From contig NC_068984.1 of assembly GCF_001194135.2 (NCBI RefSeq), forward strand, positions 90,445,776-90,489,952: DNA of 44,177 nt, given 5' to 3'. A model generated the notes under the pieces. The model was not told the origin of the DNA. It was given only the letters and a program-made list of their open reading frames with translations, and made no database searches. Both the position numbers and the translations under genes were made by a program. This stretch comes from Octopus bimaculoides. Lineage: Eukaryota. Positions 265 to 44,177 of the stretch are shown piece after piece (the first letter of the stretch is position 1; each line of letters starts with the position of its first letter).

Positions 265-1018
265 GAAACATTATTATTTCTAAATCTCTCAACGAGTGAC
301 ATTCAGTAACAGTGCTCTAAAGTAAAAATTATTTGCCAGCATAATATGGCAGTCCCGGTTTGGACGAATGTTACTGCTATTTAGCCCCAGGAAACATCGT
401 CTCCAGCTGGCTATAGAGTCACTATCTGTGTCCTTATATTTTCGAACAGAGGAGTTTAGCATCCCCACTCAGCACAAAGCAATATCTGTGGACCGCGGTT
501 TCTGGGTTATTTCTCTTCCTCGGCACATAATAATTGCTTGGCTAGAGATAGCGCTGCCAAATTCCTGTTCGAAAACATATACATTATTTTCAAAGTGACA
601 CACAGTCACTGATCTAATAATTAGAAACATTATTATATCTAAATCTCTCAACGATTGACATTCATCAACAGTACACTAAAGTAAAGATTATTTGTTAACA
701 TAATGTGGCAGTCCCGGTTGGGACGAATGTTACTGTTAATTAGCCCCAGGAAACATCGTCACCAGCTGGCTATACGACACTATCTCTAAACGAGAGACAT
801 TCAGTAACAGTGCACTGTGCTGAGGAAGAGAAATAACCCAGGAACTGCAGTCCACAGATATTGCTTTGTGCTAAATGGGGATGCTAAACTCCTTTGTTCG
901 GAAATATAGGGACACAGATAGTATGTCGTATAGCCAGCTGGAGACGATGTTTCCTGGGGCTAAGTAACAGTAACATTCGTCCCAACCGAGACTGCCACAT
1001 TATGTTGACAAATATAAT
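265..1018. repeat. Three copies of an unclassified dispersed repeat: direct 265-620, direct partial 624-785, inverted 811-1018
   Basis: The core CATAATRTGGCAGTCCCGGTT.GGACGAATGTTACTG.TA.TTAGCCCCAGGAAACATCGTC is present twice on + and once on -. A further fragment lies at 28738-28800. Confidence 0.85.
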
Positions 1019-1090
1019 ATATACATACATACTGCACAGCATATACAGACACAAAGGTAGACAGAGAACCAGACAGAGAACCAGGCAGAC

Positions 1091-1265
<175 letters not shown>

Positions 1266-1274
1266 AGAGACAAG

Positions 1275-3358
1275 TTTCTTTATTAGCCACACAGGGCTGA
1301 ACACAGAGGGAACAAAATACAATGTTGAGCTTTTCTTTTTGAAAAAAAGAGAAAAAAGGAGAAAAATAAAATTCCGATAAAAAGGGATTGTGAAAAAAAA
1401 TGCCGATCAAAAGGGATCGTGTATCACAGAAAATATCATAAATGTAAAAAACAGATTAGGTTTATCCGTTGAAAGAAAAGCCTACAAAAAAGACCACAGT
1501 GACCTCGGGCAATAATGTCATACAAAAACACATAACAGTAAGTTACTCTCTTTTTTCTTTTCTTTTTCTGGTTCATAGGATTATGCTCAAGTACCATCCT
1601 TGCAACATTCACCCATCTTTTATTGAAACATTCGCTAGATAAAACTTTCCTCTCTACTCTCACCTTCCTTTTCAAGTGATACTTGAAGTTGATGAGAGAT
1701 TGACCAGAGAGGAAAGTGTTTGTCTCTAGGCCTTCCAGATCGCCTGACCATTGGAACGCTTCCTTTCCACAAGAAGCGGAAGAGGATTCGTTCCAGTTTG
1801 GTGATGGTAGGGTCGGGACAAGGCACGACGGTCAGGCGGTAGTAGATGATGGACGCGATGTACGCGTTCGCCACCTCCGCCCGACCTTTTAGGGACAGCT
1901 TCCTCTCGGCCCATTGCCGGGCGTGAGTGGCCACTCTACTCGTTATCTCGTCCCAGTTCTTCTCCCTACTCGTTATCTCGTCCCGGACCAAACCAGACCC
2001 CGAGAGCAACTCGACCGGACCGTCGGTCCAGCGTCCCACGACGGCATGGGCTTGCTTCTCCAGGTTCCGAGCTACAAGCCCACTGATTTTCCGGGTTAAT
2101 TTTGATGAGAGGGGGCATCCCTGACGGACCGAACGTGCAATATCGAATGGCCTCAATAGATGCCCATTCACGCGAGTTACCGAACTCATGCCTTTGTATA
2201 AGGCAGCGATCCAGCTGCGGAAAACGGGACCGAAACCAGCAGTTATGAGGACAGCCTCCAAATATCGATGGTCTACCCTATCAAAAAGCTTGGACTGATC
2301 CAAATTGATCAATGCCCCACCCATGCCAGGTTCCTTAACTACTCTGTCTATGATGTAGCGCATGAGATGGAGGTTGTCATGGATGCTCCGGCCCGGCATG
2401 GCGCACGTTTGCGCCTTGTCGACCAGTTTCTCGATGACAAGCGCCAACCTCTTGGCTAGCACATTGGGCAACATTTTCAAATCTGCATTGAGCAGAGTGA
2501 TGGACCTGAAGATATCTATTACGTCCCCCTTGTTTGGGTCTTTCTTTAGCAGCGTTACGGCTCTTTTTCAGCAGCGTTACGGCTCGAGTAATTCGTGCCC
2601 GTGTTCATCCATTGTTGCCCTGTTGTNNNNNNNNNNNNNNNNNNNNNNNNNNNNNNNNNNNNNNNNNNNNNNNNNNNNNNNNNNNNNNNNNNNNNNNNNN
2701 NNNNNNNNNNNNNNNNNNNNNNNNNNNNNNNNNNNNNNNNNNNNNNNNNNNNNNNNNNNNNNNNNNNNNNNNNNNNNNNNNNNNNNNNNNNNNNNNNNNN
2801 NNNNNNNNNNNNNNNNNNNNNNNNNNNNNNNNNNNNNNNNNNNNNNCCCATTTGTTGTTGATGATGGCTCCCGTCAAAGCCCTCTTCACTAGCGTGCTAA
2901 TCCGGTCTCTGAAAACCTGTCTCGACGGGAAAGATGCGTTCAGTTTCCAGTAACCGGGACCCTGCCTGTGTGCCTTATCTAAGTCAAGCGTACACGTCAC
3001 AAGTTTGTGATCCGTGTAGCTGACTATGTGGAATTGTGAACACCCTACGCTATCTCTATCTACTGTCCTACACAGTATTCTATCTAGATACGATCTCGAC
3101 GATCCAGTGCGATTGCTCCATGTCCACGTTGGCGCAACCGGGTGGTCGAGTTGGTACCTGTCAGACAGTTGAAAGTGTCTGAGCAGGTTTTTGAGGTATT
3201 TGCAACCCCTCCTGTTACTATCTCTGCCCACGTAGTCTAGATGCGTGTCGAAAGTAGTGTTCCAATCCCACACTAAAAGTAAAGGATGAGACGTTCCTAG
3301 GAATACTTCTAGACGTCGAAAGAAACCCGGCCGACCTGTTAAAGGTGGTGCGTAGACT
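1275..3358 (-). mobile_element. 5'-truncated, internally deleted Tx1-clade (L1 group) LINE: APE endonuclease C-half, RT relic, 3' UTR
   Basis: ORF 2605-3273 has EN motifs (WDWN, TWTW, SYLDRILC, TDHKLV, YWKLN). ORF 1635-2480 has RT motifs (LAKRL, GRSIHDN, LDQSKLFDRVDH, RQGCPLS, LSLKGRA, FLWKG). The C-terminal frame reads SLINFKYHLKRKVRVERK. The 3' end is GGCTAATAAAGAA. An N gap lies at 2627-2846. Confidence 0.93.
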
Positions 3359-9037: not shown

Positions 9038-9577
9038 GTTGGGACCTATATACACTGGAAGCTATACTAACATTATGGAATAACAACAGAAAAAAAGATT
9101 GTATAGGTATACGCCAGAAAAGGTCACAGAAAATGAGAAAGCTACCATACTCTGGGATATGCCAATGCACACAGATAGAGAAATTAAAGCCAATACGGCG
9201 GATATAGTTCTCAGAGATCACCAAGAAAAAATGTTTTCTAATCGATGTATCAATACCAACAGATGACAAGGTTTCTCTAAAAGAAATTGAGAAACTTTCA
9301 AAATACAAAGATTTGGAAATAGAGTTAACTCGAATGAAGAGTCTAAAAGCAGAAACAATTTCTGTCATAGTAGGGACATTAAGTCTGATAAAAGATATTC
9401 TGACAAATACATAGCAAAAACACAAGGGCTAACAAATATATATAACATACAGAAAATAGCACTAATAGGCACCGCACACATCCTCGGTAAAACATTTTTT
9501 AATACAGTAAAAATAAGAGCGTCAACCACAGCACATACCCAAGGCACACTTCTCGGTAGTGCAGTCAAAGCACGTGA
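9038..9577 (+). mobile_element. 5'-truncated R4/Dong-clade copy B (RLE domain, different subfamily)
   Basis: My translation gives PEKVTENEKATILWDMPMHTDREIKANTADIVL...IDVSIPTDDKVSLKEIEKLSKYKDLEIELTRM...IQKIALIGTAHIL. Confidence 0.9.
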
Positions 9578-10410: not shown

Positions 10411-11050
10411 CATGGTGTGCCATAAAGAATTTCCGACTGATATTTAGTCGTAATTTTTAGTAAAGGGCATAAAACTCAGGAGTTGTTTAGGATTTAATTA
10501 AATATGGCCATGTAACATATTGAGATATACTTCATTCAATGTGTTCCCCTTTAGCTTTCCCAATTGCCCAAAGACAATCACACGAACACCGGACGACTTC
10601 TTCACCTAAACTATCCCGTGATGCGACTAAAGCTTTCTTCAGAGTGGTGTTATTTTTGTAGGAAACTCTTGAAAAGTCACTTTCTAGAATGGACCAAATA
10701 GCGAAGTCCATAGGGTTGACGTCAGAGCCGGAGGTGGAGTCGCATATTCTTGTCCCAGAACCACTGAAATTGCTCTTGCACCACTGCTGTGTCACATTGG
10801 CACACTGAATCTCTTCCGCTACTTTTTGTACCTGTCCAGTCGCTTTGCTTTGGAAACGGCCGAAATTAGGTATCGACACAGCAGTTTTAATGACTTACAA
10901 TTTAAGTCTTCATGCACGACCTGTTGCATAGTGTCTGAGGGATATCAAGACTTTGCCTCCTGCTCTGCCGTGACATTCTCTTTCGGACGACATGCACCCT
11001 CATGTAGTCGCTTGAACTGACAGAAACAGTAGCCAAATCTCTGCCAAAGC
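10411..11050 (-). mobile_element. Internally deleted Tc1/mariner-superfamily transposon (DD37D/maT-like) with one TIR
   Basis: The end is TA|CATGGTGTGCCATAAAG (mariner-type TA-CAGGGTG terminus). The transposase relic reads HEDLNCKSLKLL..AKRL and ANVTQQWCKSNF..SDVNPMDFAIWSILE..KAKGEHIE. Confidence 0.88.
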
Positions 11051-14739: not shown

Positions 14740-15025
14740 CAGGATGAGTCTGTTAAAATTTGCCCAAGACTTCACACAGATTTTATGGGGAAAAATATCA
14801 ACTTCAGCACTGTAATATATTGAGTTAATTCCCTTTGATTGTAAGATTCCAGTATCCAATATCCAGAATTTCATCGCTCCTAAAGGAGGAATCCCTCCCT
14901 GAACTCCTTTCACCGTTGTCTATCACTGGCCCCCAGATAGCGGGTAGAGTCATCTCGCTATGTTGTATTTGGTTGGCCTTTTGATCTTGTCCATTATCTT
15001 GGTGTCCATTCCGTTGCCCTTCAGT
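14740..15025 (-). mobile_element. Possible decayed LINE RT fragment (R1/LOA/I-group-like)
   Basis: One minus frame reads GMDTKIMDKI...TTVKGVQGGIPPLG..WILD..LQSKGINSIYYSAEVDI, loosely like KGxPQGGxLSPLLW..YADDV. It contains several stops. Confidence 0.3.
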
Positions 15026-15032
15026 TGCAGGG

Positions 15033-15437
15033 GTGAAGGGCGTAGTGAAAGTGAATCTGGAAGATGGGAGGAGGATCGAGACATGAGGGTGGTGTTGCTG
15101 GATGACGGAGAGGCAGCTGGACTGCAGGAGATGTTTGGAGGTGGGATGGATGGTGCACCATTGCGGTTTCAATATGATGAACTATTACCTGTGGTAAAGT
15201 TTGAAGATCTAATGGCTTTTTTTTATTTAAACACGATACAAACTGAATTGTAAAAACAGTAAAATGGAACTTTTTACTTTCGTGGGTAGAAAGCCATTTC
15301 ATTTCATTATCATAATTTTTCACACCTCATAATTCATTCGTTAATCGTTCTATGTAATCCACATTTGTCTTGTCTGTCCTTGTGATGTTCCTTCTATATA
15401 TAAGGCTTTATGCCTGCAATAAAGAGAGGAGAGTACG
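15033..15437 (+). mobile_element. 5'-truncated copy (ORF C-terminus plus 3' UTR) of the ORF1-only element
   Basis: It aligns with 16633-17009: MRVVLLDDGEAAGLQEMFGGGMDGAPLRFQYDELLPVVKFEDL, then a near-identical UTR ending TATATAAGGCTTTATGCCTGCAATAAAGAGAG. Confidence 0.88.
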
Positions 15438-17009
15438 CATAGCCTGGTTGTTGTGTCTTGATTTCGCTTGCATGTGAATTATTGCTTTGTTAATTTGAAG
15501 TACGGAATTGTTGAATTACTGAATTGTTGAATATTGTGATTGTTGAATTTGTGATTTTTTGAATTTGTTGAAAATTTTATTTGGCTTCCCATTTATGGGT
15601 GAAGCGGTGAACAACGCGAATATGAATACGTAGGTACAAACAGGCAGTTATGCGGCGGTGACGGGCAAAAGCCTGACAGCTGTGCTACTGCAGATACGTG
15701 AACTGGAAGCAAAGGACATAGACTACAAGAAGTGTAATATCTTGTTGAAGAAGGAGGATGCCCAAGACTGACACCTGCCAAAAAAGTGACGGAGAAGACA
15801 GAAAGAAAAATTATTACTCATAAAACGTTGAATATAGCGACAAGGAAGGTGGAAATAGCAGGCGTTGAAGCGATAGAAGAATGCTTAAATGAAGTAAAAG
15901 AAGTAACTACTTTCTATACCAGAGGACGAAAGTTCGTCACGGTGTAGGTACGCTTCGTTAATGAGAACGAAGCAAAGAAATACTCCACCGTAGCCTTGAA
16001 ATCGGCACAGTGGGCACTGTTATCTACTTACTGCGGAAGACGTGCGGCCAGAGTGAGGATAGGGAGAGTGCCACCCGAAATAAACGAGGCATGGCTGGTG
16101 GCAGTTCAACTGATGGGGATATGGCCTGGATGTTATGGTACATATCAGCCTGCCTGACCTCCACAAAGTTGCGGAAGAAATAATACTACCCGATGAAACC
16201 AGACTGAGAATCATGGTGGAGGGTAGACCGCCAATGTTTCAAATGTGGAGTAAGGGGGCACATGAAGGCAAAGTGTCCCCAGAAACACGAACAGGAGGTG
16301 GTGGAGAAGGAGTGTCAGGAAGAAGTAAATGTAAGAGCAGAGGAGGAAGTAGAGTTCACTGAGGTAGAGAAAAAAAGAGGAAATAGTGAATCTCCACCGA
16401 AAAAGAAAAGAAAAGCAGAGAAAAAGGAAAAAAATGAAGCAACGGGAGATCAAACACAAGGGCCGGAGCCATCAACAAGTAAGAAGGAGGAGGGACGGAA
16501 GGAACTGGAAGATGAGATAGAAACACCAGTAATAAGGGCAGAGAATGAAGTGAGAAAGCCACGTAAAGGGAAACATGAAAGAATGATGGTGATGTACGAG
16601 AAAAGTGTAGAAATAGAAAAACGAATTGCAAAAATGAAAGGCGTAATAAGAGTAAAACTGGCAGATAAGGAGGAAAATCGAAACATGAAAGCAGTGTTGC
16701 TAGATGATGAAAAGGCAGCTTGACTGAAAGAGATATTTGGAAGTAGGATGGATAATATGCCATTATGGTTTCAATATGATGGACTACTACCTGTGGTAAA
16801 GTTTGAAGATCTGCTGAATTGTAAAAACAGTAAAATGGAACTTTCTACTTTGGTGGGTAGAAAGCCATTTCATTATCATAATTTTTCACACCTCATAATT
16901 CATTCGTTAATCGTTCTATGGTTCTATGTACCCCACGTTTGTGTTGTCTGTCCTTGTGATGTGCCTTCTATATATAAGGCTTTATGCCTATAATAAAGAG
17001 AGAAGTACG
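15438..17009 (+). mobile_element. Apparently full-length ORF1-only (Tx1-derived, HAL1-like) non-autonomous retroelement; ORF1 decayed
   Basis: A TTGAATT-repeat 5' UTR is followed by ATG at 15595. The frameshifted ORF1 reads GSYAAV..EECL..RGRKFVTV*VRF..LLSTYCGRRAARVRIGRVPPEINEAW..VEGRPP-CFKCGVRGHMKAKC, homologous to ORF1 at 43-44 kb. An E/K-rich tail leads to AATAAA at 16992 with no EN/RT. Confidence 0.8.
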
Positions 17010-17049
17010 TGTAGAATGTGTTGATAGTCGTGTCTGTGTTGATACAGAA

Positions 17050-17257
17050 ATTATACTGTGATACTGAGTGGACGTTATAACGATCCAACCTTTTGAGGAC
17101 ACTTTTGATGATAATAACACTGTACGACTGGGGGTCGTACAGTGCCAGATTGGAACGTTCTATCGACGACTTCGGAATATAACAATATCTGTCAGAGCGA
17201 CAACCGTCGTACAAAGACAGATACAACAGAACTTATCACTAGGTTACCCTGATCCGT
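17050..17257 (+). other. CpG-rich unique segment with two hairpins; possible (pseudo)exon
   Basis: The open frame 17068-17274 has N-glycosylation sequons (NNT, NIT, NLS) and a GTAAGT donor at 17258. There is no convincing in-frame acceptor. Confidence 0.25.
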
Positions 17258-17635
17258 GTAAGTATCAAAAATAATTATCATTTTGTTAAAATATTGACAC
17301 ACTAGAATACTTAAAACATGAGAGCCAGATGTACCAATATAGTTAAAGTTTTATGCAAAGTAGAATAGAATATATGGTAGGCAAATTCATTATGTTAAAA
17401 ATGTGAAGACTTGGCAATAACTAAGGTAATAACTCAAGCAAATTTTACTGTGAATTTGTAGTTATAGGTAGATTTTACTGTAATATATAACTAATTTTTG
17501 CATTACTCTATTAATTGTACTAACTAATTATGTACTACTATTATTTTTATAACCTATTTTCAAATTTGTAATTGTTAATTAATAATTACAAAAGTTGATT
17601 TTTTAATGTGGAAAAATATTTTAAGTGAGTTATTT

Positions 17636-18661
17636 GGATCTTTTCCCTTTGAATGGCAGATCGAGAGATTAATTTTCTGTAACTAAACACTTTTAAACTT
17701 CGGACACTGGTAGAATGTGTCATATAAAACATCTTTTACTCTTAGTGTTTTTGAGAAAAGTTGATATTTTCAAAGTTATTTCGTGTTAAAGTAGTTGTAT
17801 TTCGGTAATTTCAACCAATTAATGACGTGTATTCAGCTGAATAAAATTACTGCCGTTGTTTGTCAACAACAACTATCGGCGGTGTATATTTCGTTTGTCA
17901 CTGTTATTTATGACATCGTTCATGCGTTTGTACTGGTTTTAGCTTTAGGGATTTAGGGTTAGGGATAAGGTTTTAGGGTTAGGGTTAGGTTTTTAGAGTT
18001 AGGGTTAGGGTTTTAGGGTTAGGGTTTTAGGGTTAAAGTTTTAGGGTTAGGGTTGGGGTTTTAGTGGTAGGGTTAGTGTTGGGATTTTAGGGTTAGAGTT
18101 ACGGAAAAAAGTGAAAAATGAAGAAATTGGAGGAATAGGAGTAGGGGGGCAAAAAAGTCTTTCCGAAAATAGTAGCTGTAAAACAGGAAAAGAAAACTAA
18201 AAGCAGTAGAAATGCACGAACGATTGTGGTGGTGCCATGAAGTAAACATGCTTTAGATACACTCGTTTATTCATACAAACGTAACTGAGATGAAATATGT
18301 CATAAATAANNNNNNNNNNCATGAAGTAAACATGCTTTAGATACACTCGTTTATTCATACAAACGTAACTGAGATGAAATATGTCATAAATAACAGTGAC
18401 AAACGAAATATACACCGCCGGAAGTTGTTGTTGACAAACAATAGTAGTAATTTTATTCAGCTCAATCGACGTCATTGATTGGTTGAAATTACCAAAATAC
18501 GACAACTTTAACACGAAATAACTTTGAAAATACAGAATTTTCTTAACAACGCCAACAGTAAAAGATGTTTTATGTGACATATTCTACCAGTATACGAAGT
18601 TTGAAAGTATTTAGTTACAAAAAATTGATTTTTCGATCTGCCGGTCAAAAGGTAAAGATTC
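17636..18661. mobile_element. Non-autonomous Mutator-like (MULE) element with ~280-bp TIRs and 9-bp TSD
   Basis: 17636-17916 is the imperfect reverse complement of 18381-18661 (GGATCTTTTCCC.../...GGTAAAGATTC). An identical GAGTTATTT flanks both ends (17627-17635 and 18662-18670). Confidence 0.9.
17944..18100 (+). repeat. Degenerate telomere-type (TTAGGG)n tract inside the MULE
   Basis: TTAGGG and TTTTAGGG units interspersed with variants. Confidence 0.92.
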
Positions 18662-28526: not shown

Positions 28527-28603
<77 letters not shown>

Positions 28604-28643
28604 NNNNNNNNNNGTACAAATGCAAAACAAAAGTCAAACATAA

Positions 28644-28685
<42 letters not shown>
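28527..28685. repeat. (TAA)n tracts either side of a 10-N gap
   Basis: Directly visible. Confidence 0.95.
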
Positions 28686-28686
<1 letters not shown>

Positions 28687-28799
28687 TCTTTATAAATATT
28701 CATTTCAATATTTACTCATTTACATATATATAGTAGAGATTATTTACCAACATAATGTGACAGTCCTGGTTAGGACGAATGCTATTGCTATTTAGCCCC

Positions 28800-36234: not shown

Positions 36235-36495
36235 TTAGATCAAGCGCAGCTATTGACTTGATATTATATTTTATCGACCAGAAAGGATAAAAAAAATTCT
36301 GAACCTCGTTGGGATTTGAACTTGGAACGTAAAGAACTGGAACAAATACCATAAGGATCTTTTTCCAGAAATCCTACTTAGTCCTTCCAATCCACCGATC
36401 TGAAAAATATAGTAATAATCCTTTCTATTATAGGCATAAAGCCAGAAATTTAGGGGAGGAGTTGGTCGATTACATCGACCCCAGTGCTCAGCTAT
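36235..36495 (-). mobile_element. Two degenerate SINE fragments
   Basis: TTTTATCGACCAGAAAGGAT..GGATTTGAACTTGGAACGTAAAG and GGTCGATTACATCGACCCCAGTGCTCA. Confidence 0.75.
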
Positions 36496-36686
36496 TCCAG
36501 AATGGTGTCTCTCACGCTTTTTTTTGGTGGGGGGTATATATATTAGCGGCTAATATCTGATCTGAGGAAGTGTTGGCTGTTGGTTTTTCCATGTCGAATA
36601 ATCACGTTAAGCTTCTTTCCTAGAGTTGATATATACGGTGTGTGTGTGTATGTGTGCACGTTTNNNNNNNNNNATACATACATACA

Positions 36687-36751
<65 letters not shown>

Positions 36752-36789
36752 GGAAGTTATAAATTCTTTATCGGAACGACTCTAACCTT

Positions 36790-37750
36790 TGTGGATATGG
36801 TTGAAAGGGGCTCTATCACCTCTGATGAAACTAGGAACCAATCTGCTTAAATTAATAAATAGCATTCATGCCTCAATCCAATTCACTATGAAAATGAATG
36901 AAAAGGAACTCCTCTTTATGGATATTCTGATATTCAAAGAAAATGAGACAGTTACAACTGACTTCTACTACAAGAACACAGACATACACCACTATTTAGA
37001 TGTTAGATCTTGCCATCCTTCCCATAGAAAAAGTAACATACCATATAATATGGCAAAGCATATATGTTCAGTAGTCACAGATACCATTAGACGAGAGAAA
37101 CGAGTAGCAGAACTTATATTCCTTCAGAAACAAAAATACCCCAACAAGGTAATTCAACATGCCGTACCAAAAGCAAAGAGAAACACTCAAGCTAGGTGTG
37201 AAAACAAAAATACAAATACAATTATTCCATTTGTAGCCACCCACAATCCTAGAAACCACGCCATCCTGCATTCAGTCAAACGATACCTCCCAATTCTTCA
37301 TCAATCACCAAATCTCACACGAATAATTTTAAAAATCACAAGCTATCAACAGTCGAAGAAAACCACTAAACCTCAAAAGACTTCTAACAAAGATGAAAAA
37401 GAAACGATGCAAGTAACCAAACTGTAGAGACCCTCGTTGTGGGGTATCTGAATTAATTGAACAAGGGACAACCAACAGATTCAAGAATGGGAACGAATTA
37501 AAAGTGAATGCAACATGAATTGCAAAACAAAAAACATCATCTACTGCATCACATGCCCACAATGCAATGAAAACTACATTGGGGAGACAAGAAGGGAACT
37601 GACCAGTCGTGTAAATTTGCATATACAACAAATCCATCTCTTAAGAATGTCCCATGCAGTGAACATCTAGATATTTGTGCAAATGGAAAATTTTTAATAT
37701 TCCATGTTACCAAATAAACGATGAAAATGATCAACTACGAAAGGCAAAAG
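36790..37750 (+). mobile_element. Penelope-like retroelement relic (RT C-terminus plus GIY-YIG endonuclease)
   Basis: INSIHASIQFTM..LLFMDILI..TDFYYKNTDIHHYLDVRSCHP..NIPYNMA..QKYP..FVATHNP, then NCKTKNIIYCITCPQCNENYIGETRRELTSRVNLH. Confidence 0.93.
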
Positions 37751-38899: not shown

Positions 38900-39159
38900 T
38901 TACTAATGCTCACTTATTCTATACTTATTCTATCGGTCTCCTTTGCCAAATTGCTAAGCTATGAGGATGTAAATACACCAACCCCGGCTGTCAAGCGGTG
39001 GTGGAGGACAAATACAGACACAAATACAAAGACATAAACGATGGACGTCTTTCAGTTTCCGTCTACCAAATCCACCGAGGCTATAGTGGAAGACACTTTC
39101 CCAAGCTAACACGCAGTGGAATTGAACCCGGAACTATGCAGTTGGGAAGCAAGCTTCTT
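38900..39159 (-). mobile_element. tRNA-derived SINE (third family) lacking its extreme 5' end
   Basis: Minus strand AAGAAGCTTGCTTCCCAAC..GGTTCAATTCC (B box) ACTGCG..CTTGGGAAAGTGTCTTCCACTATAGCC..GGATTTGGTAGACGGAAACTGAAAGA. Confidence 0.85.
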
Positions 39160-42100
39160 TATTTCATAAATTGACCATGGAAGCCGTACATAGATGGGAC
39201 AAACAAGAACAGACAAACATAGAGGGTTAAGAAGTTGCTTATTACGGATGAAAAAGTTTCGAATTATAAAATATGTCATGCTGTTAAAAATTATATCTTT
39301 TTTTTTTAATTTCAATATAACCTCGATAATCATTGCAAATTTTACAATGTGTGACTGAAGGAAAGGCGTCCAGCCGCCAGGTTCGAATCTTTACTTTTCC
39401 TTCTGGCCCCACTTACCTGGTTCCAGTCACTCGCAGCTTGTTCACTACTTGCTTCCATCTTTTCATGGACACATCCTGTGATAGGTATCTCTTCTCCAGC
39501 CTGATCTTTGCTATCGAGGTGGTAACTAAAGAAGTTAACCAACCCCTGGCCGGAGACGAAAGTATCTGTCACTATACCTCTTACACGCGTCTTCCATACT
39601 GTTTCTTTCAGTATGGATACTACGCAGAAAAAACAAGCATTCCTTTCTCCGTTAAGGAAAGGAAGCGGTACAATCTTGATGATAGACTCAGCCTATAGCT
39701 GTACTCTTCCCATCGTTGACAACAGTTGCTAGACAAAGGCTATCAGTCCTGATAATTCCGGACACTCCTCGAAGGCGTGCAAGACAGTTTCTCTGTCCCG
39801 CCCCCATCTTAGGCATGTGGGAGAGACGGCACTTCCGTGCCTTGACAGCTTGTCTCGAACAGACAATGCCGAACGGTACCACTGCCAAGCCAGGGATTTC
39901 TGGTAATTCTTAGATACCCCGGCCCGAAAGTTCTCCTGAACAGGTTGATCAACTGATTTCTATCGAAGCCCAGGGTCTCTCCCAGGACATCGTCTGACAT
40001 AAATTTGACTAACCCGCTGTAAAAATTCTACAGTGGAACTCTTGTGGCCGGTACTGCCCGCCCGAGAGAGTAGCTGGAGTGCCTGACAGCACTCTAATTG
40101 CCAACCCCCTAGCCTAGGTCTTCGTTTGATCCATGGACCAATATCCATTAAGGACGTCAACAGTGGAAGGTAGAACCTTACGTGTAGTGACCACACCTGC
40201 TCCCCATCCAGTTAAAGCCAGAGGTCCCTCAACCTTAACGTGGTTTTCGCATATTCAGCCAAGGCATCCCTAGCCCGCTCTTTAGCGATTTTTGGCAGCA
40301 GACAGAGCGCTTCACAAGTGGCTTTCCTCCCTTCCACAAAAAGCGGAAAAGAATTCTTTCTAACTTGTTCATCCACAAATCGGGGCAAGGCACAACGATC
40401 AGGCGGTAGGTGATGACAGATGCTATGAACATCCGCACAACCTCCACCCTCTCTAGCAAGGATAACGCCCGCCCAAACCAGGTCTGGGTTAGGGCAGTCT
40501 CCTTGCCCGTAACCTCGCTCCAATTCTTCTCTATCTGGAGGTCTGGACCGAACCAGACCCCCTAGTAACTTAACCGAACCTTCTGTCCAACGTCCCACGA
40601 CATTATTGGACGACATCGACTTGCCCTCCAGATGCCGAGTTGCAGGCCGACCCCTAGTTAACCTTTGCTCCTGCCACCGCCTCGTATACTCTGATGGCGT
40701 TTTCCACATAAGGAAGCTGCCTTTCTTTAGACACGATGATGGAGATGTCATCTGTATATGCAGTGGCTCCTCTTCCACGCCACAGATCATGCGGCACGCC
40801 CCCTTACGCCTCCAACTTCTGCAGCAATGGCTCAAGAACCAATACATACATAAGCGGTAACAAGGGATATACCTGGCGAACTGAGCATTCAATCTTGAAC
40901 GGTTTTGAAAAAAAACCGTTTACTCGGACGATATACTCACTCGATGTCACTACAAAACAACAATCCAACTGCAGAAAGTTGGGCCCAACCCGGCCTCCCC
41001 GAGGACCGCTGCCAGGTACCGATGGTCGACCTTATCAAATGCTTTAGACTGGTCTAAATGTACCAGTGCCCCACCTTTGTCAGAAATTTCCCAACCCTCT
41101 CTAAGGAGTAGCGTATAAGATAGAAATTATCGTGAATTGACCTGCCCGAGATAGCGCAAGTTTGCGTCAACCTTTTGCCAACACCTTGGCCAAAATCTTT
41201 AACTCTGTGTTTAGACGAGTTATGGGCCGAAAATTACTTATAATATCCTCCTTGTTCTGGTTCTTTCTCACCGGCTCGCAAATCTGGGAATTCTCCCATT
41301 CTACTGCCAGTTGGCGTAGACGCTGGCCAGTAGGTGCCCGAACAAGTCTGGCATATTTTTGCAAAACTCATAGGGTAGACCATCAAGATCCAGCGACTTG
41401 TCCCCGAGCAATCGGGCAGCACCTCGATCACGTCGACAGCTGTAATCGTCCCGTCACAGCACTCAGCTTCTCGTGCTGAGAGACGCGGTCCACCAGCCAG
41501 GAAGTCCCGTAGGGCCTCACCATAGTCTAGCGTCCCGCTCCTCCCGAACAACTCAGCGAAGTGCTTGTAAAGTGCCTCACACATCTCCTCCTGTCCTTTG
41601 ACCAAACGTCCATTTTCGTCAATCAAAAACCTGATTATGGCATCGTTGCCACGCTGAGTCTTTACCGTACAGGCCCACCCGGCAACATTAATTCCCTCGC
41701 GGCCCAATGCACGTACTTTTGCCCGAACCCTGCATCCTTCATGTTTGGCTTTGAGGTGACGGTCCAAGGCTGTTCTCGCTGCCAAAATTTGGGATGCAAA
41801 GCCCAATCTCAACGCCTCTTCTAAAGCCTTAAGTAGATTCCCTTCTATCCTAGCTTTATCTAAACTTAGCTGACGGCTAAATCTAATAGGCACAAAACGT
41901 ATGGGTCTTTTTAGAGCAAACTACCACCGGTAATTCACTACGGTGCCGGTTAATGCCCTTTTCCCTAACTCCTTAATCTGGTTACAGTATGCCTCACAAG
42001 CCAAAATAGACTTGTTCAGCTTCCAGCAGCCGGATCCCTGTCTATAGGCACTTTCTATGTTCAGCCTACACTTATCCATTTTATGATTAGTGTAGGCGGC

Positions 42101-44177
42101 TTGAACAAACTGTGGACAGCTAAAGCTAGACTTATCTCTAATCCTTAAAACTATCCTGTCTAATTTAAACTTGAGCTTCTCGTTGCCATTCATCCAGGTC
42201 CACACTGGGACGTTCGGGTGCTCCAGTATGTAACGATCTGCCAGCTGAAAACGCTTAAGCAGATCGATGAGACGTGAGTTAACCCTACCAGTCGAGCCAC
42301 AGCTATCCAGGCGTGCATCCAGGATAGCATTATAGTCTCCTAACACAACTAATATTTTGGACTTCACGAGAAAGTTCTCTAGGCGCTGATAGAAATCAGT
42401 TTGCTGCCTTCTTTCAAAAAGCGCGTAAATACCGATCAACCTGAAGGCTTTGTTGCTGTATGTCACGTCAAAGACGTCCAGCCCACCTTCAGGGTCCACA
42501 AAGACTGTACTTATCTGCAGAGCCAAGACTTTTCGGACTACTACACCTCCTCGACCTCCAGTCTGACCAGGAGACATGATTTTCTCATAGCCATTCAGGA
42601 GAACCGAGAAGGTGTGTAGCCTATCCAGCTTGGTCTCTGTAGCAACCATCACATGTATGTCATGTGATCTGAGGTCGTCGAGGAGACATGCTTGCTTCCA
42701 CTTCGAGCTCAGACCACGCACATTTATACAACCAAGGTTAAGTGTTGTCAGTTTAAGAAAAAGTAAAGTTTCTACTTACCTTTTCGTTGGTGATGTATGG
42801 GCCAACCTCACATCCCTCTTTTTCCCTCTTTCCTTAGATATTTCGGTTGGTCTTTTAGCCTTGAAATGGCTTCTAGATGCCTCCCCTTCAGTTTTTAAAC
42901 AACGTTTCTCCTATCCAGGCACATTGTCTAGAATAGTCCTTGTGCTTTGGATATAATATTGTAGTGTGGTGTGGCGCTATCACATCAGTTGTGTATTTGT
43001 CCTTTGGGTCGAACTCACCAAATTCTTTTTCCCTTTGGTTTCTCTGGGACGGTTGGGCGAGTTTTTTTTTAATTGTCTGTATTGCAAGGTTTTCTAATTT
43101 TGTGGGGGATATGGATGGGGAGTGGGACAATAGTCTTTTGGCTGAGTATCGTACAGCAGTGAACTCCCCCTCGACTACCTCCATGGTGTCATCTGAGGGA
43201 GTTGCACTTTTGTTATCAGGTGCCATCGACGTTAAGGGATGGGTATCTTTCTTGTTGTCGAGAATGATATATGCGTAGGTTGGGGCTTTTGGAGCATTTG
43301 TTTGCGGACATGTGTGGGCACCGCAGTTGGGGGAGTGGGTGTTTTTGCTGTTGTAGGGGCTGGTGTGTGTGGGGGTTTGGGAGCAGTTTTTTGAATTTGT
43401 GAGGGGCCAGGTGTAGATTGTAATTACAGATGTTTGAGCCTTTGAATGTTCTTCCTCTTCTATCGAGGTTTGTCCTTCCTTTTTCTTGGAGTCACAATCG
43501 GCCCTTATGTGCCCCTTTCGACCAAATTTGAAGCACCTAGGCTTCTTTCCCTCCACCTGAATTTTCAGAACCACGTTCTCACCCACGAGCGCTCTATTGG
43601 GAATTTTTTCAAGGTCTTCCGGAGCTGCTTGGATGATAGCCGTGATACTCTGCCCGAGCCAATTTGGGGGGGTGGGGGGCGAGCGTGTCACTTGTAAGAT
43701 GTTAATTTTGTCCTCCGTTAAATAACAGGGCGGTCATCACCCACACGGTTTCAATTTCCGGCGGTACTTCTGCTACCTTAATACGGGATGTGCGCCGCCC
43801 CATGCAAGTCGGCAAAAGCACCACTTCATTTGTTTTTAAAGGGCTGACAGAGTGCTCGTGGACCTTCTCTGCTGTCCTAAACCTAGCTTCTACGGTGCCA
43901 AATGCTCTCCCTCTTGAGATAGACATGATGTCATTCCAAATTGAGGCAAGACATTTTTCAATTCTATCCTGGTCCATGTGTGCCATTTTCTTTTCCTTTG
44001 GGCAAAAATGTTTTGAATATAATGGTTCTTGTTTTTATTTCCACTGTTGCATCAGTGAGAGGGGATATTTTAACATCGCCCTCCGCCTCCGACATCCTCT
44101 TGAACATCTCCTGGAGGTCCCCAAATGGGATCTCCAGATTTTCAGTATGTATCGCAGCGACTGCCGCGAAGCCCTTG
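39155..44177 (-). mobile_element. Near full-length Tx1-clade LINE (ORF1 with zinc knuckle; ORF2 EN-RT-CCHC), decayed, 5' end beyond window
   Basis: ORF1 has GFAAV..EKCL..RGRAFGTVEARF..GRRTSRIKVAEVPPEI..VEGKKPRCFKFGRKGHIRADC. ORF2 has NVRGL, ETKL, IYA, LGDYNA, LDRIVL, WKLN, NFRPITRLNTELKILAK, SKAFD, AYTDDISIIV, GLGMP and TCLRW..ETVLHAFEEC. The 3' UTR ends GAAATAAAGAA. Confidence 0.96.

What the first reader, a model, noticed from the sequence alone, without database searches (positions are those of the whole stretch)
15438..17009. Candidate ORF1-only Tx1-derived retrotransposon (HAL1/HeT-A-like)
The decayed ORF aligns motif by motif with ORF1 of the autonomous Tx1 at 43-44 kb: ExCL, RGRxFxTVxxRF, LLxTxxGRR, VPPEI..W and VEG..CFKxGxxGHxxAxC. 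It then runs into a ~150-bp UTR and AATAAA with no endonuclease or RT. The second copy of the same 3' end upstream argues for a family rather than a one-off deletion. ORF1-only elements are established in mammals (HAL1) and Drosophila (HeT-A). I do not know of one described from a cephalopod Tx1 lineage.
Basis: partly seen in the sequence, partly recalled or inferred. Interest (0 to 1): 0.85.

Follow-up and report, generated by a model that had tools for sequence, protein, structure and literature searches.

The report
ORF1-only Tx1-type retrotransposon in octopus
This stretch of octopus DNA is a decayed copy of a jumping gene that kept only the RNA-binding gene of a Tx1-type LINE and lost the copying enzyme, so it must borrow that enzyme; elements of this design are known elsewhere (HAL1, HeT-A, Ag-Sponge), so this is a new example, not a new principle.

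Summary
Window 15451-17004 (+) is a decayed unit about 1.55 kb long. It has a 5'UTR, a LINE-type ORF1 and a 190-nt 3'UTR, with no endonuclease or RT. A 5'-truncated second copy lies at 15025-15432.

Nine further octopod loci settle the family question. Seven more copies, in Octopus sinensis, O. vulgaris, O. bimaculoides and one unnamed sequencing run, pair this ORF1 with this 3' end. None has ORF2 (one locus is cut by an assembly gap). Two copies still encode intact proteins.

Two loci with related ORF1s carry APE + RT + zf-RVT directly downstream.

The last 60 nt, including a 4-bp hairpin before AATAAAGA, are shared with Tx1-type LINE copies and with a tRNA-type SINE. That points to mobilisation in trans.

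Five copies sit at one identical site of a foldback repeat, with TSDs of up to 20 bp and two empty sites found. This is Tx1-like target specificity.

Head-to-tail tandems recur.

The upstream window copy carries an ADAR-like A-to-G hypermutation cluster.

Verdict: interpretation supported; a new member of a known kind; moderate interest.

The parts
15025..15432 (+). Upstream 5'-truncated copy (U). It holds the last ~65 codons of ORF1 (C-terminal domain, 15025-~15230) plus the 3'UTR and tail. Its AATAAA is at 15418-15423.
   Evidence: 78% identical to 16635-17005. Family proteins hit 15026-15223 by tblastn. Its ORF ending is of the family type...FEDLMAFF, with the stop shifted by one extra T.
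15030..15163 (+). A-to-G hypermutated stretch inside U.
   Evidence: 26 of 39 substitutions against the main copy are main A to upstream G. The 5' neighbour G is depleted (1 of 26 against 20 of 46, Fisher p=3e-4). The 3'UTR part has only 2 such changes. Family proteins agree with the main copy, which sets the direction of change.
15433..15450 (+). 18-nt spacer GTACGCATAGCCTGGTTG between U and the full unit. It is repeated after the full unit, so it is a candidate target-site duplication.
   Evidence: Local alignment of the two junctions stops here; homology beyond is at chance level. TSDs of 19-20 bp are seen in L003 and L008.
15451..15594 (+). 5'UTR of the full unit (M), with (GAATTGTT)n-like short repeats at 15505-15572.
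   Evidence: Homologous to the 5'UTR of the L002 copy, z=4.5. Tandem repeats found. A similar 5'UTR occurs in L009 copy 2.
15595..16813 (+). Decayed ORF1. It contains two RRM-like domains, a CCHC knuckle (16235-16285), a Lys/Glu-rich linker and a conserved C-terminal domain (~16553-16813). It has 3 stops, 3 frameshifts and 2 deletions.
16814..17004 (+). 3'UTR of M. The conserved 3' tail is ~16947-17004.
   Evidence: 93% identical to U over the UTR. The tail profile hits L001, L003, L006 and L008 at E=2e-5 to 1e-26.
16977..16989 (+). Tail hairpin AGGC-TTTAT-GCCT, 2 nt before AATAAA (16992-16997).
   Evidence: Across 11 tails, 93% of cells are paired, 8 cells change on both sides, and 0 of 500 shuffles reach the observed score.
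17005..17023 (+). 3' copy of the flanking direct repeat, GTACGTGTAGAATGTGTTG.
39155..44177 (-). Decayed Tx1-type LINE, cut by the window end. ORF1 is at 43986-42888, APE at 42721-41921, RT at 41893-40212 and the 3' tail at 39155-39280.
   Evidence: Its tail aligns with the ORF1-only 3'UTR at z=6.2. nhmmer gives E=0.06 for the whole search, at exactly the expected place.
1276..3273 (-). Second Tx1-type copy (EN/RT ORFs at 1635-3273). Its 3' tail at 1276-1340 reads ...TGTTCCCTCTGTGTTCAGCCCTGTGTGGCTAATAAAGAAAC.
   Evidence: (E=0.0024).
36421..36520 (-). 3' end of a tRNA-type SINE carrying the same tail variant (GGCTTTATGCCTATAATA) as the window's ORF1-only copies.

Best explanation
The region holds two old, dead copies of a non-autonomous, ORF1-only retrotransposon family of octopods that descends from Tx1-type (L1-group) LINEs.

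Structure. A unit is about 1.55-1.75 kb. It has a ~75-170-nt 5'UTR and one ORF of about 380-405 aa. The ORF encodes two RRM-like domains, a CCHC knuckle, an acidic/basic linker and, in most copies examined, a folded C-terminal domain. A 190-520-nt 3'UTR follows. Its last ~60 nt carry a small hairpin just before (T)AATAAAGARA. There is no endonuclease or reverse transcriptase.

Inferred life cycle. The element is transcribed and its ORF1 protein coats the RNA. The ORF2 protein of a Tx1-type LINE recognises the shared 3' tail and copies the RNA into the genome by target-primed reverse transcription. This yields TSDs of up to 20 bp and occasional 5'-truncated copies.

Target choice. In several lineages the borrowed endonuclease places the element at one fixed site of a foldback repeat ('T'). 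Insertion duplicates that site, so a later insertion can land next to an earlier one. This would explain the head-to-tail pair in the window.

Shown: the anatomy, the family-wide absence of ORF2, the shared tail, TSDs, filled and empty target sites, intact relatives, and recurrent tandems.

Inferred: trans-mobilisation, the identity of the partner, the role of ORF1p, and the stacking mechanism for the window pair.
For: ORF1 homology to Tx1-type ORF1: E=6e-23. It is 32% identical to the ORF1 of L004 and 24% to that of L005. ORF2 follows both of those ORF1s, and Pfam finds Exo_endo_phos, RVT_1 and zf-RVT there.

Family members are found only in octopods. There are 441 profile hits in 1.84 billion representatives. 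All 22 hits that carry a name come from Octopus bimaculoides, O. sinensis, O. vulgaris or Argonauta hians; the 11 from ENA or Logan assemblies carry no name.

No EN or RT follows ORF1 in window M and U, L001, L003, L006, L007, L008 or L009. The L002 3'UTR begins like that of L001 before an assembly gap.

Related intact ORFs exist: P0017 (404 aa, O. bimaculoides; no DNA was recovered for it) and P0082 (379 aa, the O. vulgaris copy L003).

In a neighbour-joining tree of the RRM-to-knuckle region, a split separates the three ORF1-only copies from the three autonomous copies in 194 of 200 bootstrap replicates.

The tail is shared with Tx1 copies and a SINE. The hairpin shows compensatory changes: GG/CC in ORF1-only copies, GC/GC in Tx1, CC/GG in the SINE.

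TSDs are 19-20 bp in L003 and L008. L001, L003, L006, L007 and L008 sit at the same site of element T. Two empty T sites were found.

Tx1-clade LINEs are known for target specificity, and SINE/LINE partners are known to share 3' tails (PMC4494074).

Head-to-tail tandems recur: in L009 and in the gene models P0096 and P0001, which join a C-terminal piece to a downstream ORF1 piece.

The A-to-G cluster in U indicates passage through RNA.
Against: The autonomous partner was not found. The five Tx1-type copies examined lie next to microsatellites or a SINE, not in element T, and their 5' regions show no clear similarity to the family's 5'UTR.

Tail similarity to the Tx1 copies is weak in whole-search terms (nhmmer E=0.002 to 2). 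It becomes convincing only because the hits fall exactly at the Tx1 3' ends.

Only about ten copies were examined. They were reached through ORF1-like gene models, so an autonomous relative inside the same ORF1 clade could have been missed.

L003/P0082 and its relatives show no detectable C-terminal domain, so more than one ORF1-only lineage may exist.

The flank of the window pair is not significantly T-like. The L009 tandem has almost no spacer, so the stacking model is not proven.

No selection test (dN/dS) and no expression data were available.
Confidence: 0.8

Rival explanations
1. A one-off or repeatedly arising internal deletion: dead-on-arrival Tx1 copies that lost ORF2 by chance. On this reading the ORF1-only state has no propagating lineage of its own.
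For: Internal deletions are common in LINE copies. The window copy is heavily decayed. L003-type copies lack the C-terminal domain, which hints at more than one origin.
Against: The same ORF1-to-3'UTR architecture occurs in about ten copies from at least three species and in several deeply diverged subfamilies (28-60% aa identity). Intact ORFs of 379 and 404 aa persist. The ORF1-only ORF1s group apart from the autonomous ones. Full-length copies have TSDs.
Confidence: 0.08
2. A gag-only LTR-type or pseudo-LTR element. The repeat-internal-repeat layout (15025-15450, 15451-16625, 16626-17023) would be two long terminal repeats around an internal region, with TATA and AATAAA in the repeat.
For: A direct repeat of about 400 nt flanks the internal part. 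TATATATAAGG lies 22 nt before the AATAAA in both repeats.
Against: The upstream repeat starts inside the conserved coding domain and differs from the downstream repeat by 7-21%. Single units with TSDs and no upstream repeat exist in L003 and L008. The repeat ends in a tail shared with Tx1 LINEs and a SINE. The TATA-like motif is absent from the other subfamilies. No primer-binding site or polypurine tract is evident by eye.
Confidence: 0.03
3. A host gene family derived from LINE ORF1 (like mammalian L1TD1). The dispersed copies would be processed pseudogenes or tandem gene duplicates, not a transposon.
For: Intact ORFs occur in several species and are annotated as genes. The C-terminal domain is folded and conserved. 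Units carry their own AATAAA.
Against: There are many decayed and 5'-truncated copies. The units have no introns or poly(A) tails. They end in the Tx1/SINE tail. They are inserted at one fixed site of a repeat, with TSDs and empty sites. These are transposon hallmarks. The two readings are not fully exclusive.
Confidence: 0.07

Closest known systems
HAL1 (half-L1), mammalian ORF1-only derivative of L1
   Same: It belongs to the L1 group of LINEs. It keeps ORF1 and the 3' end and lacks ORF2. It propagates as its own lineage and depends on the ORF2p of an autonomous relative (listed among ORF1-present bipartite non-autonomous LINEs in PMC5786205).
   Different: HAL1 ORF1p is the coiled-coil/RRM/CTD type and HAL1 inserts without site specificity (my own knowledge). 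Here ORF1p has RRM-like domains plus a CCHC knuckle. Several lineages are site-specific, and the 3' end is a defined hairpin tail that is not followed by a poly(A) run in the copies read here.
HeT-A of Drosophila (Jockey clade)
   Same: It is ORF1(gag)-only and relies on a partner's RT. Copies occur in head-to-tail arrays.
   Different: HeT-A is telomere-specific and belongs to the Jockey clade, with a promoter in its 3' end (my own knowledge). The window pair is interstitial, lies between other repeats, and comes from a Tx1-type lineage. The TATA-like motif in the 3' end is subfamily-specific and untested.
Ag-Sponge of Anopheles (CR1 clade)
   Same: It is the third described ORF1-present non-autonomous LINE (PMC5786205).
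   Different: It belongs to a different clade and host. No site specificity is known to me.
Tx1L inserted in Tx1D in Xenopus, and other target-specific Tx1-clade LINEs (Keno, Kibi, Koshi)
   Same: Insertion occurs at one fixed site of a non-autonomous DNA-transposon-like repeat, giving composite elements, and SINEs share the LINE tail (PMC4494074). Here, five copies occupy one site of foldback element T, and two empty T sites were found.
   Different: Those elements are autonomous, with ORF1 and ORF2. The octopus family has ORF1 only.

Membership tests
ORF1-present non-autonomous LINE (HAL1 / HeT-A / Ag-Sponge kind) | Encodes an ORF1p homologue and no endonuclease or reverse transcriptase, as a property of the family and not of one copy | tested here: met
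   Window M and U, L001, L003, L006, L007, L008 and L009 have no EN or RT hit after ORF1. L002 is cut by an assembly gap 50 nt into its 3'UTR.
ORF1-present non-autonomous LINE (HAL1 / HeT-A / Ag-Sponge kind) | 3' end shared with an autonomous LINE lineage | tested here: met
   The 60-nt tail and its hairpin are shared with four Tx1-type copies. The statistical support is moderate (whole-search E=0.002 to 2), but the hits fall at the exact 3' ends.
ORF1-present non-autonomous LINE (HAL1 / HeT-A / Ag-Sponge kind) | 5' end shared with the autonomous counterpart (bipartite origin by internal deletion) | tested here: inconclusive
   The 5'UTR is conserved within the family (M against L002, z=4.5). 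It shows no clear match to the 5' regions of L004 or L005 (z=2.5 and -0.9). The true partner was not sampled.
ORF1-present non-autonomous LINE (HAL1 / HeT-A / Ag-Sponge kind) | Dispersed copies with the marks of target-primed reverse transcription (TSDs, 5' truncation) | tested here: met
   TSDs of 19-20 bp in L003 and L008, two empty target sites, and 5'-truncated copies (U and L001).
ORF1-present non-autonomous LINE (HAL1 / HeT-A / Ag-Sponge kind) | ORF1 kept functional by selection; mobilised in trans by the partner's ORF2p | not testable with these tools
   Intact ORFs exist (P0017 404 aa, P0082 379 aa). dN/dS needs many DNA copies, and mobilisation needs an assay.
Tx1 clade of L1-group LINEs | Placement by RT phylogeny | not testable with these tools
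   The element has no RT. Its sampled relatives have APE + RVT_1 + zf-RVT, which fits the L1 group but does not separate Tx1 from L1. Papers on octopus repeats report L1-Tx1 as abundant.
Tx1 clade of L1-group LINEs | ORF1p with RRM domain(s) followed by a CCHC zinc knuckle | tested here: met
   zf-CCHC by Pfam. The model shows two RRM-like domains, with Foldseek hits to IMP3 RRM12, Sxl and HuD.
Tx1 clade of L1-group LINEs | Target-sequence preference (common in the clade, not universal) | tested here: met
   Five copies lie at the same site of element T, and two empty sites were found. This was not shown for the window pair.
HeT-A-like telomeric array element | Located in head-to-tail arrays at chromosome ends | tested here: not met
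   The pair lies in the middle of a 44-kb window, between unrelated repeats on both sides. The TTAGGG-like run at 17936-18101 lies inside an inverted-repeat element.
HeT-A-like telomeric array element | Promoter in the 3' end that drives the downstream neighbour | tested here: inconclusive
   TATATATAAGG lies about 30 nt before the unit junction in both window copies, but it is replaced by TGTATGGAGG or TGTGTTTAGG in other subfamilies. No transcription data were available.
LTR retrotransposon (gag-only derivative) | Matching long terminal repeats on every full copy, plus a primer-binding site and polypurine tract | tested here: not met
   L003 and L008 are single units bounded by TSDs with no terminal repeats.

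The most novel reading that the evidence does not exclude
The octopod ORF1-only family is an old, self-sustaining lineage. It has kept a working ORF1 protein for longer than the divergence of Octopus species while relying on the enzyme of a site-specific Tx1 partner. Because each insertion duplicates its own target, the family builds HeT-A-like head-to-tail arrays inside a foldback DNA transposon. The upstream window copy would in addition be a genomic fossil of a retrotransposon RNA that was hyper-edited by ADAR before reverse transcription, in an animal group famous for RNA editing.
Probability: 0.3. Interest if true: 0.6.

Novelty: new member of a known kind. Interest (0 to 1): 0.45.

Why it matters
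ORF1-only LINE derivatives are rare. The review text read here lists three: HeT-A, HAL1 and Ag-Sponge (PMC5786205). They bear on an open question: what ORF1 protein contributes when the copying enzyme comes from another element.

A Tx1-type example offers a compact natural system in which a LINE, a SINE and an ORF1-only element compete for the same enzyme. It has a defined 3' hairpin tail, a fixed genomic target, intact copies in at least two Octopus species and a SINE that uses the same tail.

It also matters for annotation. Octopus genome annotations list these ORFs as 'CCHC-type domain-containing' or 'uncharacterized' genes, and some gene models fuse pieces of neighbouring copies.

I could not check Repbase or Dfam, so the family may already be deposited there under a Tx1 non-autonomous name.

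Tried and rejected
LTR-like reading of the repeat-internal-repeat layout. Rejected because single-unit copies with TSDs exist.

Extension of the repeat beyond 15450/17023 into a third unit. The post-junction alignment scores at chance level.

A 3'-end TATA promoter as a family feature. The motif is not conserved outside the window subfamily.

The window pair sitting in the same foldback element T as the other copies. My by-eye similarity (CAGAAAYTA) was not supported: nhmmer finds T copies at window 329-1011 and 28721-28799 but not at 17005-17300, and pairwise scores are at shuffle level.

Homology of the C-terminal domain to the C-termini of autonomous Tx1 ORF1s. It is only suggestive: hhalign E=0.006 and 0.04, both around the LKExFxxDV motif. 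Pfam has no family for the domain.

Searches that gave little:
- Contig look-ups for the UniRef-only O. bimaculoides proteins found nothing.
- The word-indexed homologue searches returned only 4, 9 and 2 proteins.
- Rfam found nothing credible in the L008 flanks.
- blastn of the whole unit against the window missed the Tx1 tails. They appeared only with profiles and anchored alignment.

An error of mine: the first tree used a wrong frame for the first half of the L002 ORF. I repeated it correctly.

Full report
**1. What is in the window**

The sequence at 15025-17023 (+) consists of a partial unit followed by a full unit. The direct repeat 15034-15431 / 16635-17005 is 78% identical (E=2e-98).

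Translation in three frames shows a decayed ORF starting at ATG 15595. I joined four frame pieces into a 417-aa conceptual protein. It aligns with the ORF1 of the Tx1-type element at 43986-42888(-) at 26% identity over 223 aa, E=6e-23. Pfam recognises only the CCHC knuckle.

The main copy has stops at 15631, 15945 and 16721. It has frameshifts near 15767, 16119 and 16234, a deletion of about 20 aa after the second RRM-like region, and a 31-nt deletion at about 16813.

**2.

Octopus bimaculoides proteins found with the conceptual ORF (43-50% identity) run on past the position of the 16723 stop. They continue through a conserved segment...KMK.I.R.KLA.KE.N..KAVLLE....LKEIFG.R......YD.L..VV.FEDL..FM, and then end. 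The same segment is encoded by the main copy up to 16813 and by the upstream partial copy at 15025-15230.

So the TGA at 16723 is a mutation, the true 3'UTR is about 190 nt, and the upstream piece is a 5'-truncated copy that begins inside the coding region.

**3. How common the protein is**

A profile search of 1.84 billion representative proteins found 441 relatives. I looked up the sources of 30 of them; together with the nine proteins already named, all 22 that carry a name come from O. bimaculoides, O. sinensis, O. vulgaris or Argonauta hians, and the 11 from ENA or Logan assemblies carry no name.

Two relatives are intact. P0017 (404 aa) has the C-terminal domain. P0082 (379 aa) shows no detectable one.

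An AlphaFold model of P0017 (mean pLDDT 75) shows two RRM-like domains, the knuckle, a disordered linker and a confidently folded C-terminal domain. Foldseek returns tandem-RRM proteins such as IMP3 RRM12, Sxl and HuD.

**4. Does ORF2 ever follow this ORF1?**

Nine genomic loci were recovered through annotated proteins.

- In L004 (O. sinensis) and L005 (A. hians), a related ORF1 is followed directly by Exo_endo_phos, RVT_1 and zf-RVT. These are autonomous-type Tx1/L1-group elements. The related ORF1s are 32% and 24% identical to the window ORF.
- In L001 and L006 (O. sinensis), L003, L007 and L008 (O. vulgaris) and L009 (a Logan contig), ORF1 is followed by a 200-520-nt UTR and the tail. No EN or RT similarity is present.
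- In L002 (O. bimaculoides), the 3'UTR starts like that of L001 and then runs into an assembly gap.

In a neighbour-joining tree of the RRM-to-knuckle region, a split separates the three ORF1-only copies from the three autonomous ones in 194 of 200 bootstrap replicates.

**5. The 3' tail**

Anchoring sequences on AATAAA shows a shared motif in all ORF1-only copies...TGTCCCCTCTGTGTTTAGGCCTTGTGCC(TAT)AATAAAGARA. The same motif occurs in four Tx1-type copies: window 39155-39280(-), window 1276-1340(-), L004 at about 15289-15344 and L005 at about 15187-15242. It also occurs at the end of a tRNA-type SINE: L001 at 620-691 and 10615-10672, L005 at 9076-9130, and window 36421-36474(-).

A profile built only from ORF1-only tails finds the SINE tails at E=1e-4 and three of the four Tx1 tails at E=0.002 to 2 for the whole 155-kb search. 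Each hit ends exactly at the element's 3' end.

A 4-bp stem with a mostly 5-nt loop lies just before AATAAA. It reads AGGC/GCCT in ORF1-only copies, AGCC/GGCT in Tx1 and ACCC/GGGT in the SINE. Across 11 tails, 93% of cells are paired, 8 cells change on both sides, and no shuffle or slid control comes close.

Sharing a 3' tail is the classical mark of a LINE and the non-autonomous elements it mobilises (PMC4494074).

**6. Insertion behaviour**

L008 is bounded by a 20-bp duplication, AGCAAGCCA[T/G]GCTACTCCAG. L003 is bounded by a 19-20-bp duplication.

The flanks of L001, L003, L006, L007 and L008 are homologous to one another. They belong to a foldback repeat, here called T, with arms such as L008 7043-7171 and 9275-9403. 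All five elements sit at the same position in T. Uninterrupted T copies with a single copy of the duplicated 20 bp lie at L008 10095-10409(-) and L007 7281-7629(-).

This is site-specific insertion, as known for Tx1L in Tx1D and for other Tx1-clade elements (PMC4494074).

The Tx1-type copies sampled here end next to microsatellites or a SINE, not in T. The actual partner is therefore still unknown.

**7. The tandem pair**

In the window, the partial copy ends at 15432. Then come 18 nt (GTACGCATAGCCTGGTTG), then the full unit, then a diverged copy of the same 18-19 nt.

The simplest reading is a TSD of the full unit. That places its target directly after an older copy. A site-specific element regenerates its target on insertion, which would give exactly this stacking. 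However, the window flank is not significantly T-like.

Tandems recur elsewhere. In L009 the tail of one copy is followed within about 3 nt by the 5'UTR of the next. The gene models P0096 and P0001 join a C-terminal-domain piece to the start or the middle of a downstream ORF1. The near absence of a spacer in L009 leaves template switching between RNAs as an alternative mechanism.

**8. An unexpected feature**

The coding part of the upstream copy differs from the main copy by 39 substitutions. Of these, 26 are A in the main copy and G in the upstream copy. The adjoining 3'UTR has only 2 such changes (Fisher p=3e-6).

Family proteins agree with the main copy, so the upstream copy is the changed one. 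The altered adenosines avoid a 5' G (1 of 26 against 20 of 46, p=3e-4). To my knowledge this is the ADAR neighbour preference.

The likely meaning is that this copy was reverse-transcribed from a hyper-edited RNA. That would also explain why the coding part looks more diverged than the UTR without invoking selection.

**9. Comparison with known elements, and verdict**

ORF1-present non-autonomous LINEs are described from the Jockey (HeT-A), L1 (HAL1) and CR1 (Ag-Sponge) clades (PMC5786205). Papers on octopus repeats list L1-Tx1 families but do not mention an ORF1-only one. I could not consult Repbase or Dfam.

It is a new member of a known kind and is of moderate interest. The interest is raised somewhat by three additions: the site specificity, the tail shared with a SINE, and the editing footprint.

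Noticed in passing
window 15030-15163: Cluster of 24 A-to-G changes in the upstream partial copy relative to the main copy and the family proteins (26 over 15025-15211). The 5' neighbour G is depleted, as with ADAR. The adjoining 285 nt are almost free of such changes. It looks like a fossil of a hyper-edited RNA that was reverse-transcribed.
   Followed up: partly
L008 6975-7462 and 9187-9476; empty copies at L008 10095-10409(-) and L007 7281-7629(-); window 329-523(-), 688-785(-), 820-1011(+), 28721-28799(-): A foldback repeat ('T') with inverted arms of about 130-250 nt, bordered by (TA)n. It is the fixed target of five ORF1-only copies. Copies without an insertion also occur in the window. 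This was not classified; it may be a non-autonomous DNA transposon analogous to Tx1D.
   Followed up: partly
window 36421-36520(-); L001 450-692 and 10450-10673; L005 8960-9131: A tRNA-type SINE (B-box-like GTTCAAATTCC) ends in the same 60-nt tail and hairpin as the Tx1-type LINEs and the ORF1-only family. The window copy even carries the GGCTTTATGCC variant of the window's ORF1-only copies.
   Followed up: partly
L009 734-2700; proteins P0096 and P0001: Further head-to-tail arrangements of ORF1-only copies. In L009 the next copy's 5'UTR begins about 3 nt after the previous tail. Two O. bimaculoides gene models splice a C-terminal-domain piece onto a downstream ORF1 piece, so they are annotation chimeras of neighbouring copies.
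   Followed up: partly
window 17638-18659: An inverted repeat (arms 17638-17923 and 18374-18659, 87% complementary) encloses degenerate telomere-like TTAGGG / TTTTAGGG repeats at 17936-18101, about 0.9 kb downstream of the element. It is interstitial. I found no link to the element.
   Followed up: no
L004 15345-15390; window 28540-28690(-); window 880-1275(-): The Tx1-type copies end directly in microsatellites: (ATT)n in two cases and a (CCGT/CTGT)n-like run in one. These may be microsatellite-targeting Tx1 lineages like Kibi and Koshi, or microsatellite tails.
   Followed up: no
protein P0023 (559 aa): This gene model carries an RGS domain split by a knuckle-to-C-terminal piece of the ORF1 family. 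It is either an insertion annotated as exon or an exonised fragment.
   Followed up: no
window 15396-15406 and 16970-16980: TATATATAAGG lies 22 nt upstream of the AATAAA and about 30 nt before the end of the unit, in both window copies only. Other subfamilies have TGTATGGAGG or TGTGTTTAGG at this position. It could be a subfamily-specific promoter for a downstream neighbour, or just drift.
   Followed up: partly
window 36789-37427(+): A 212-aa ORF that, by eye, resembles the C-terminal part of a reverse transcriptase from another retroelement class (...FMDILIF...TDFYYKNTDIHHYLD..S.HP...). It was not analysed.
   Followed up: no
protein P0014 (453 aa): An ORF1 family member from O. bimaculoides has an exact internal duplication of about 100 aa in the linker and C-terminal region.
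   Followed up: no
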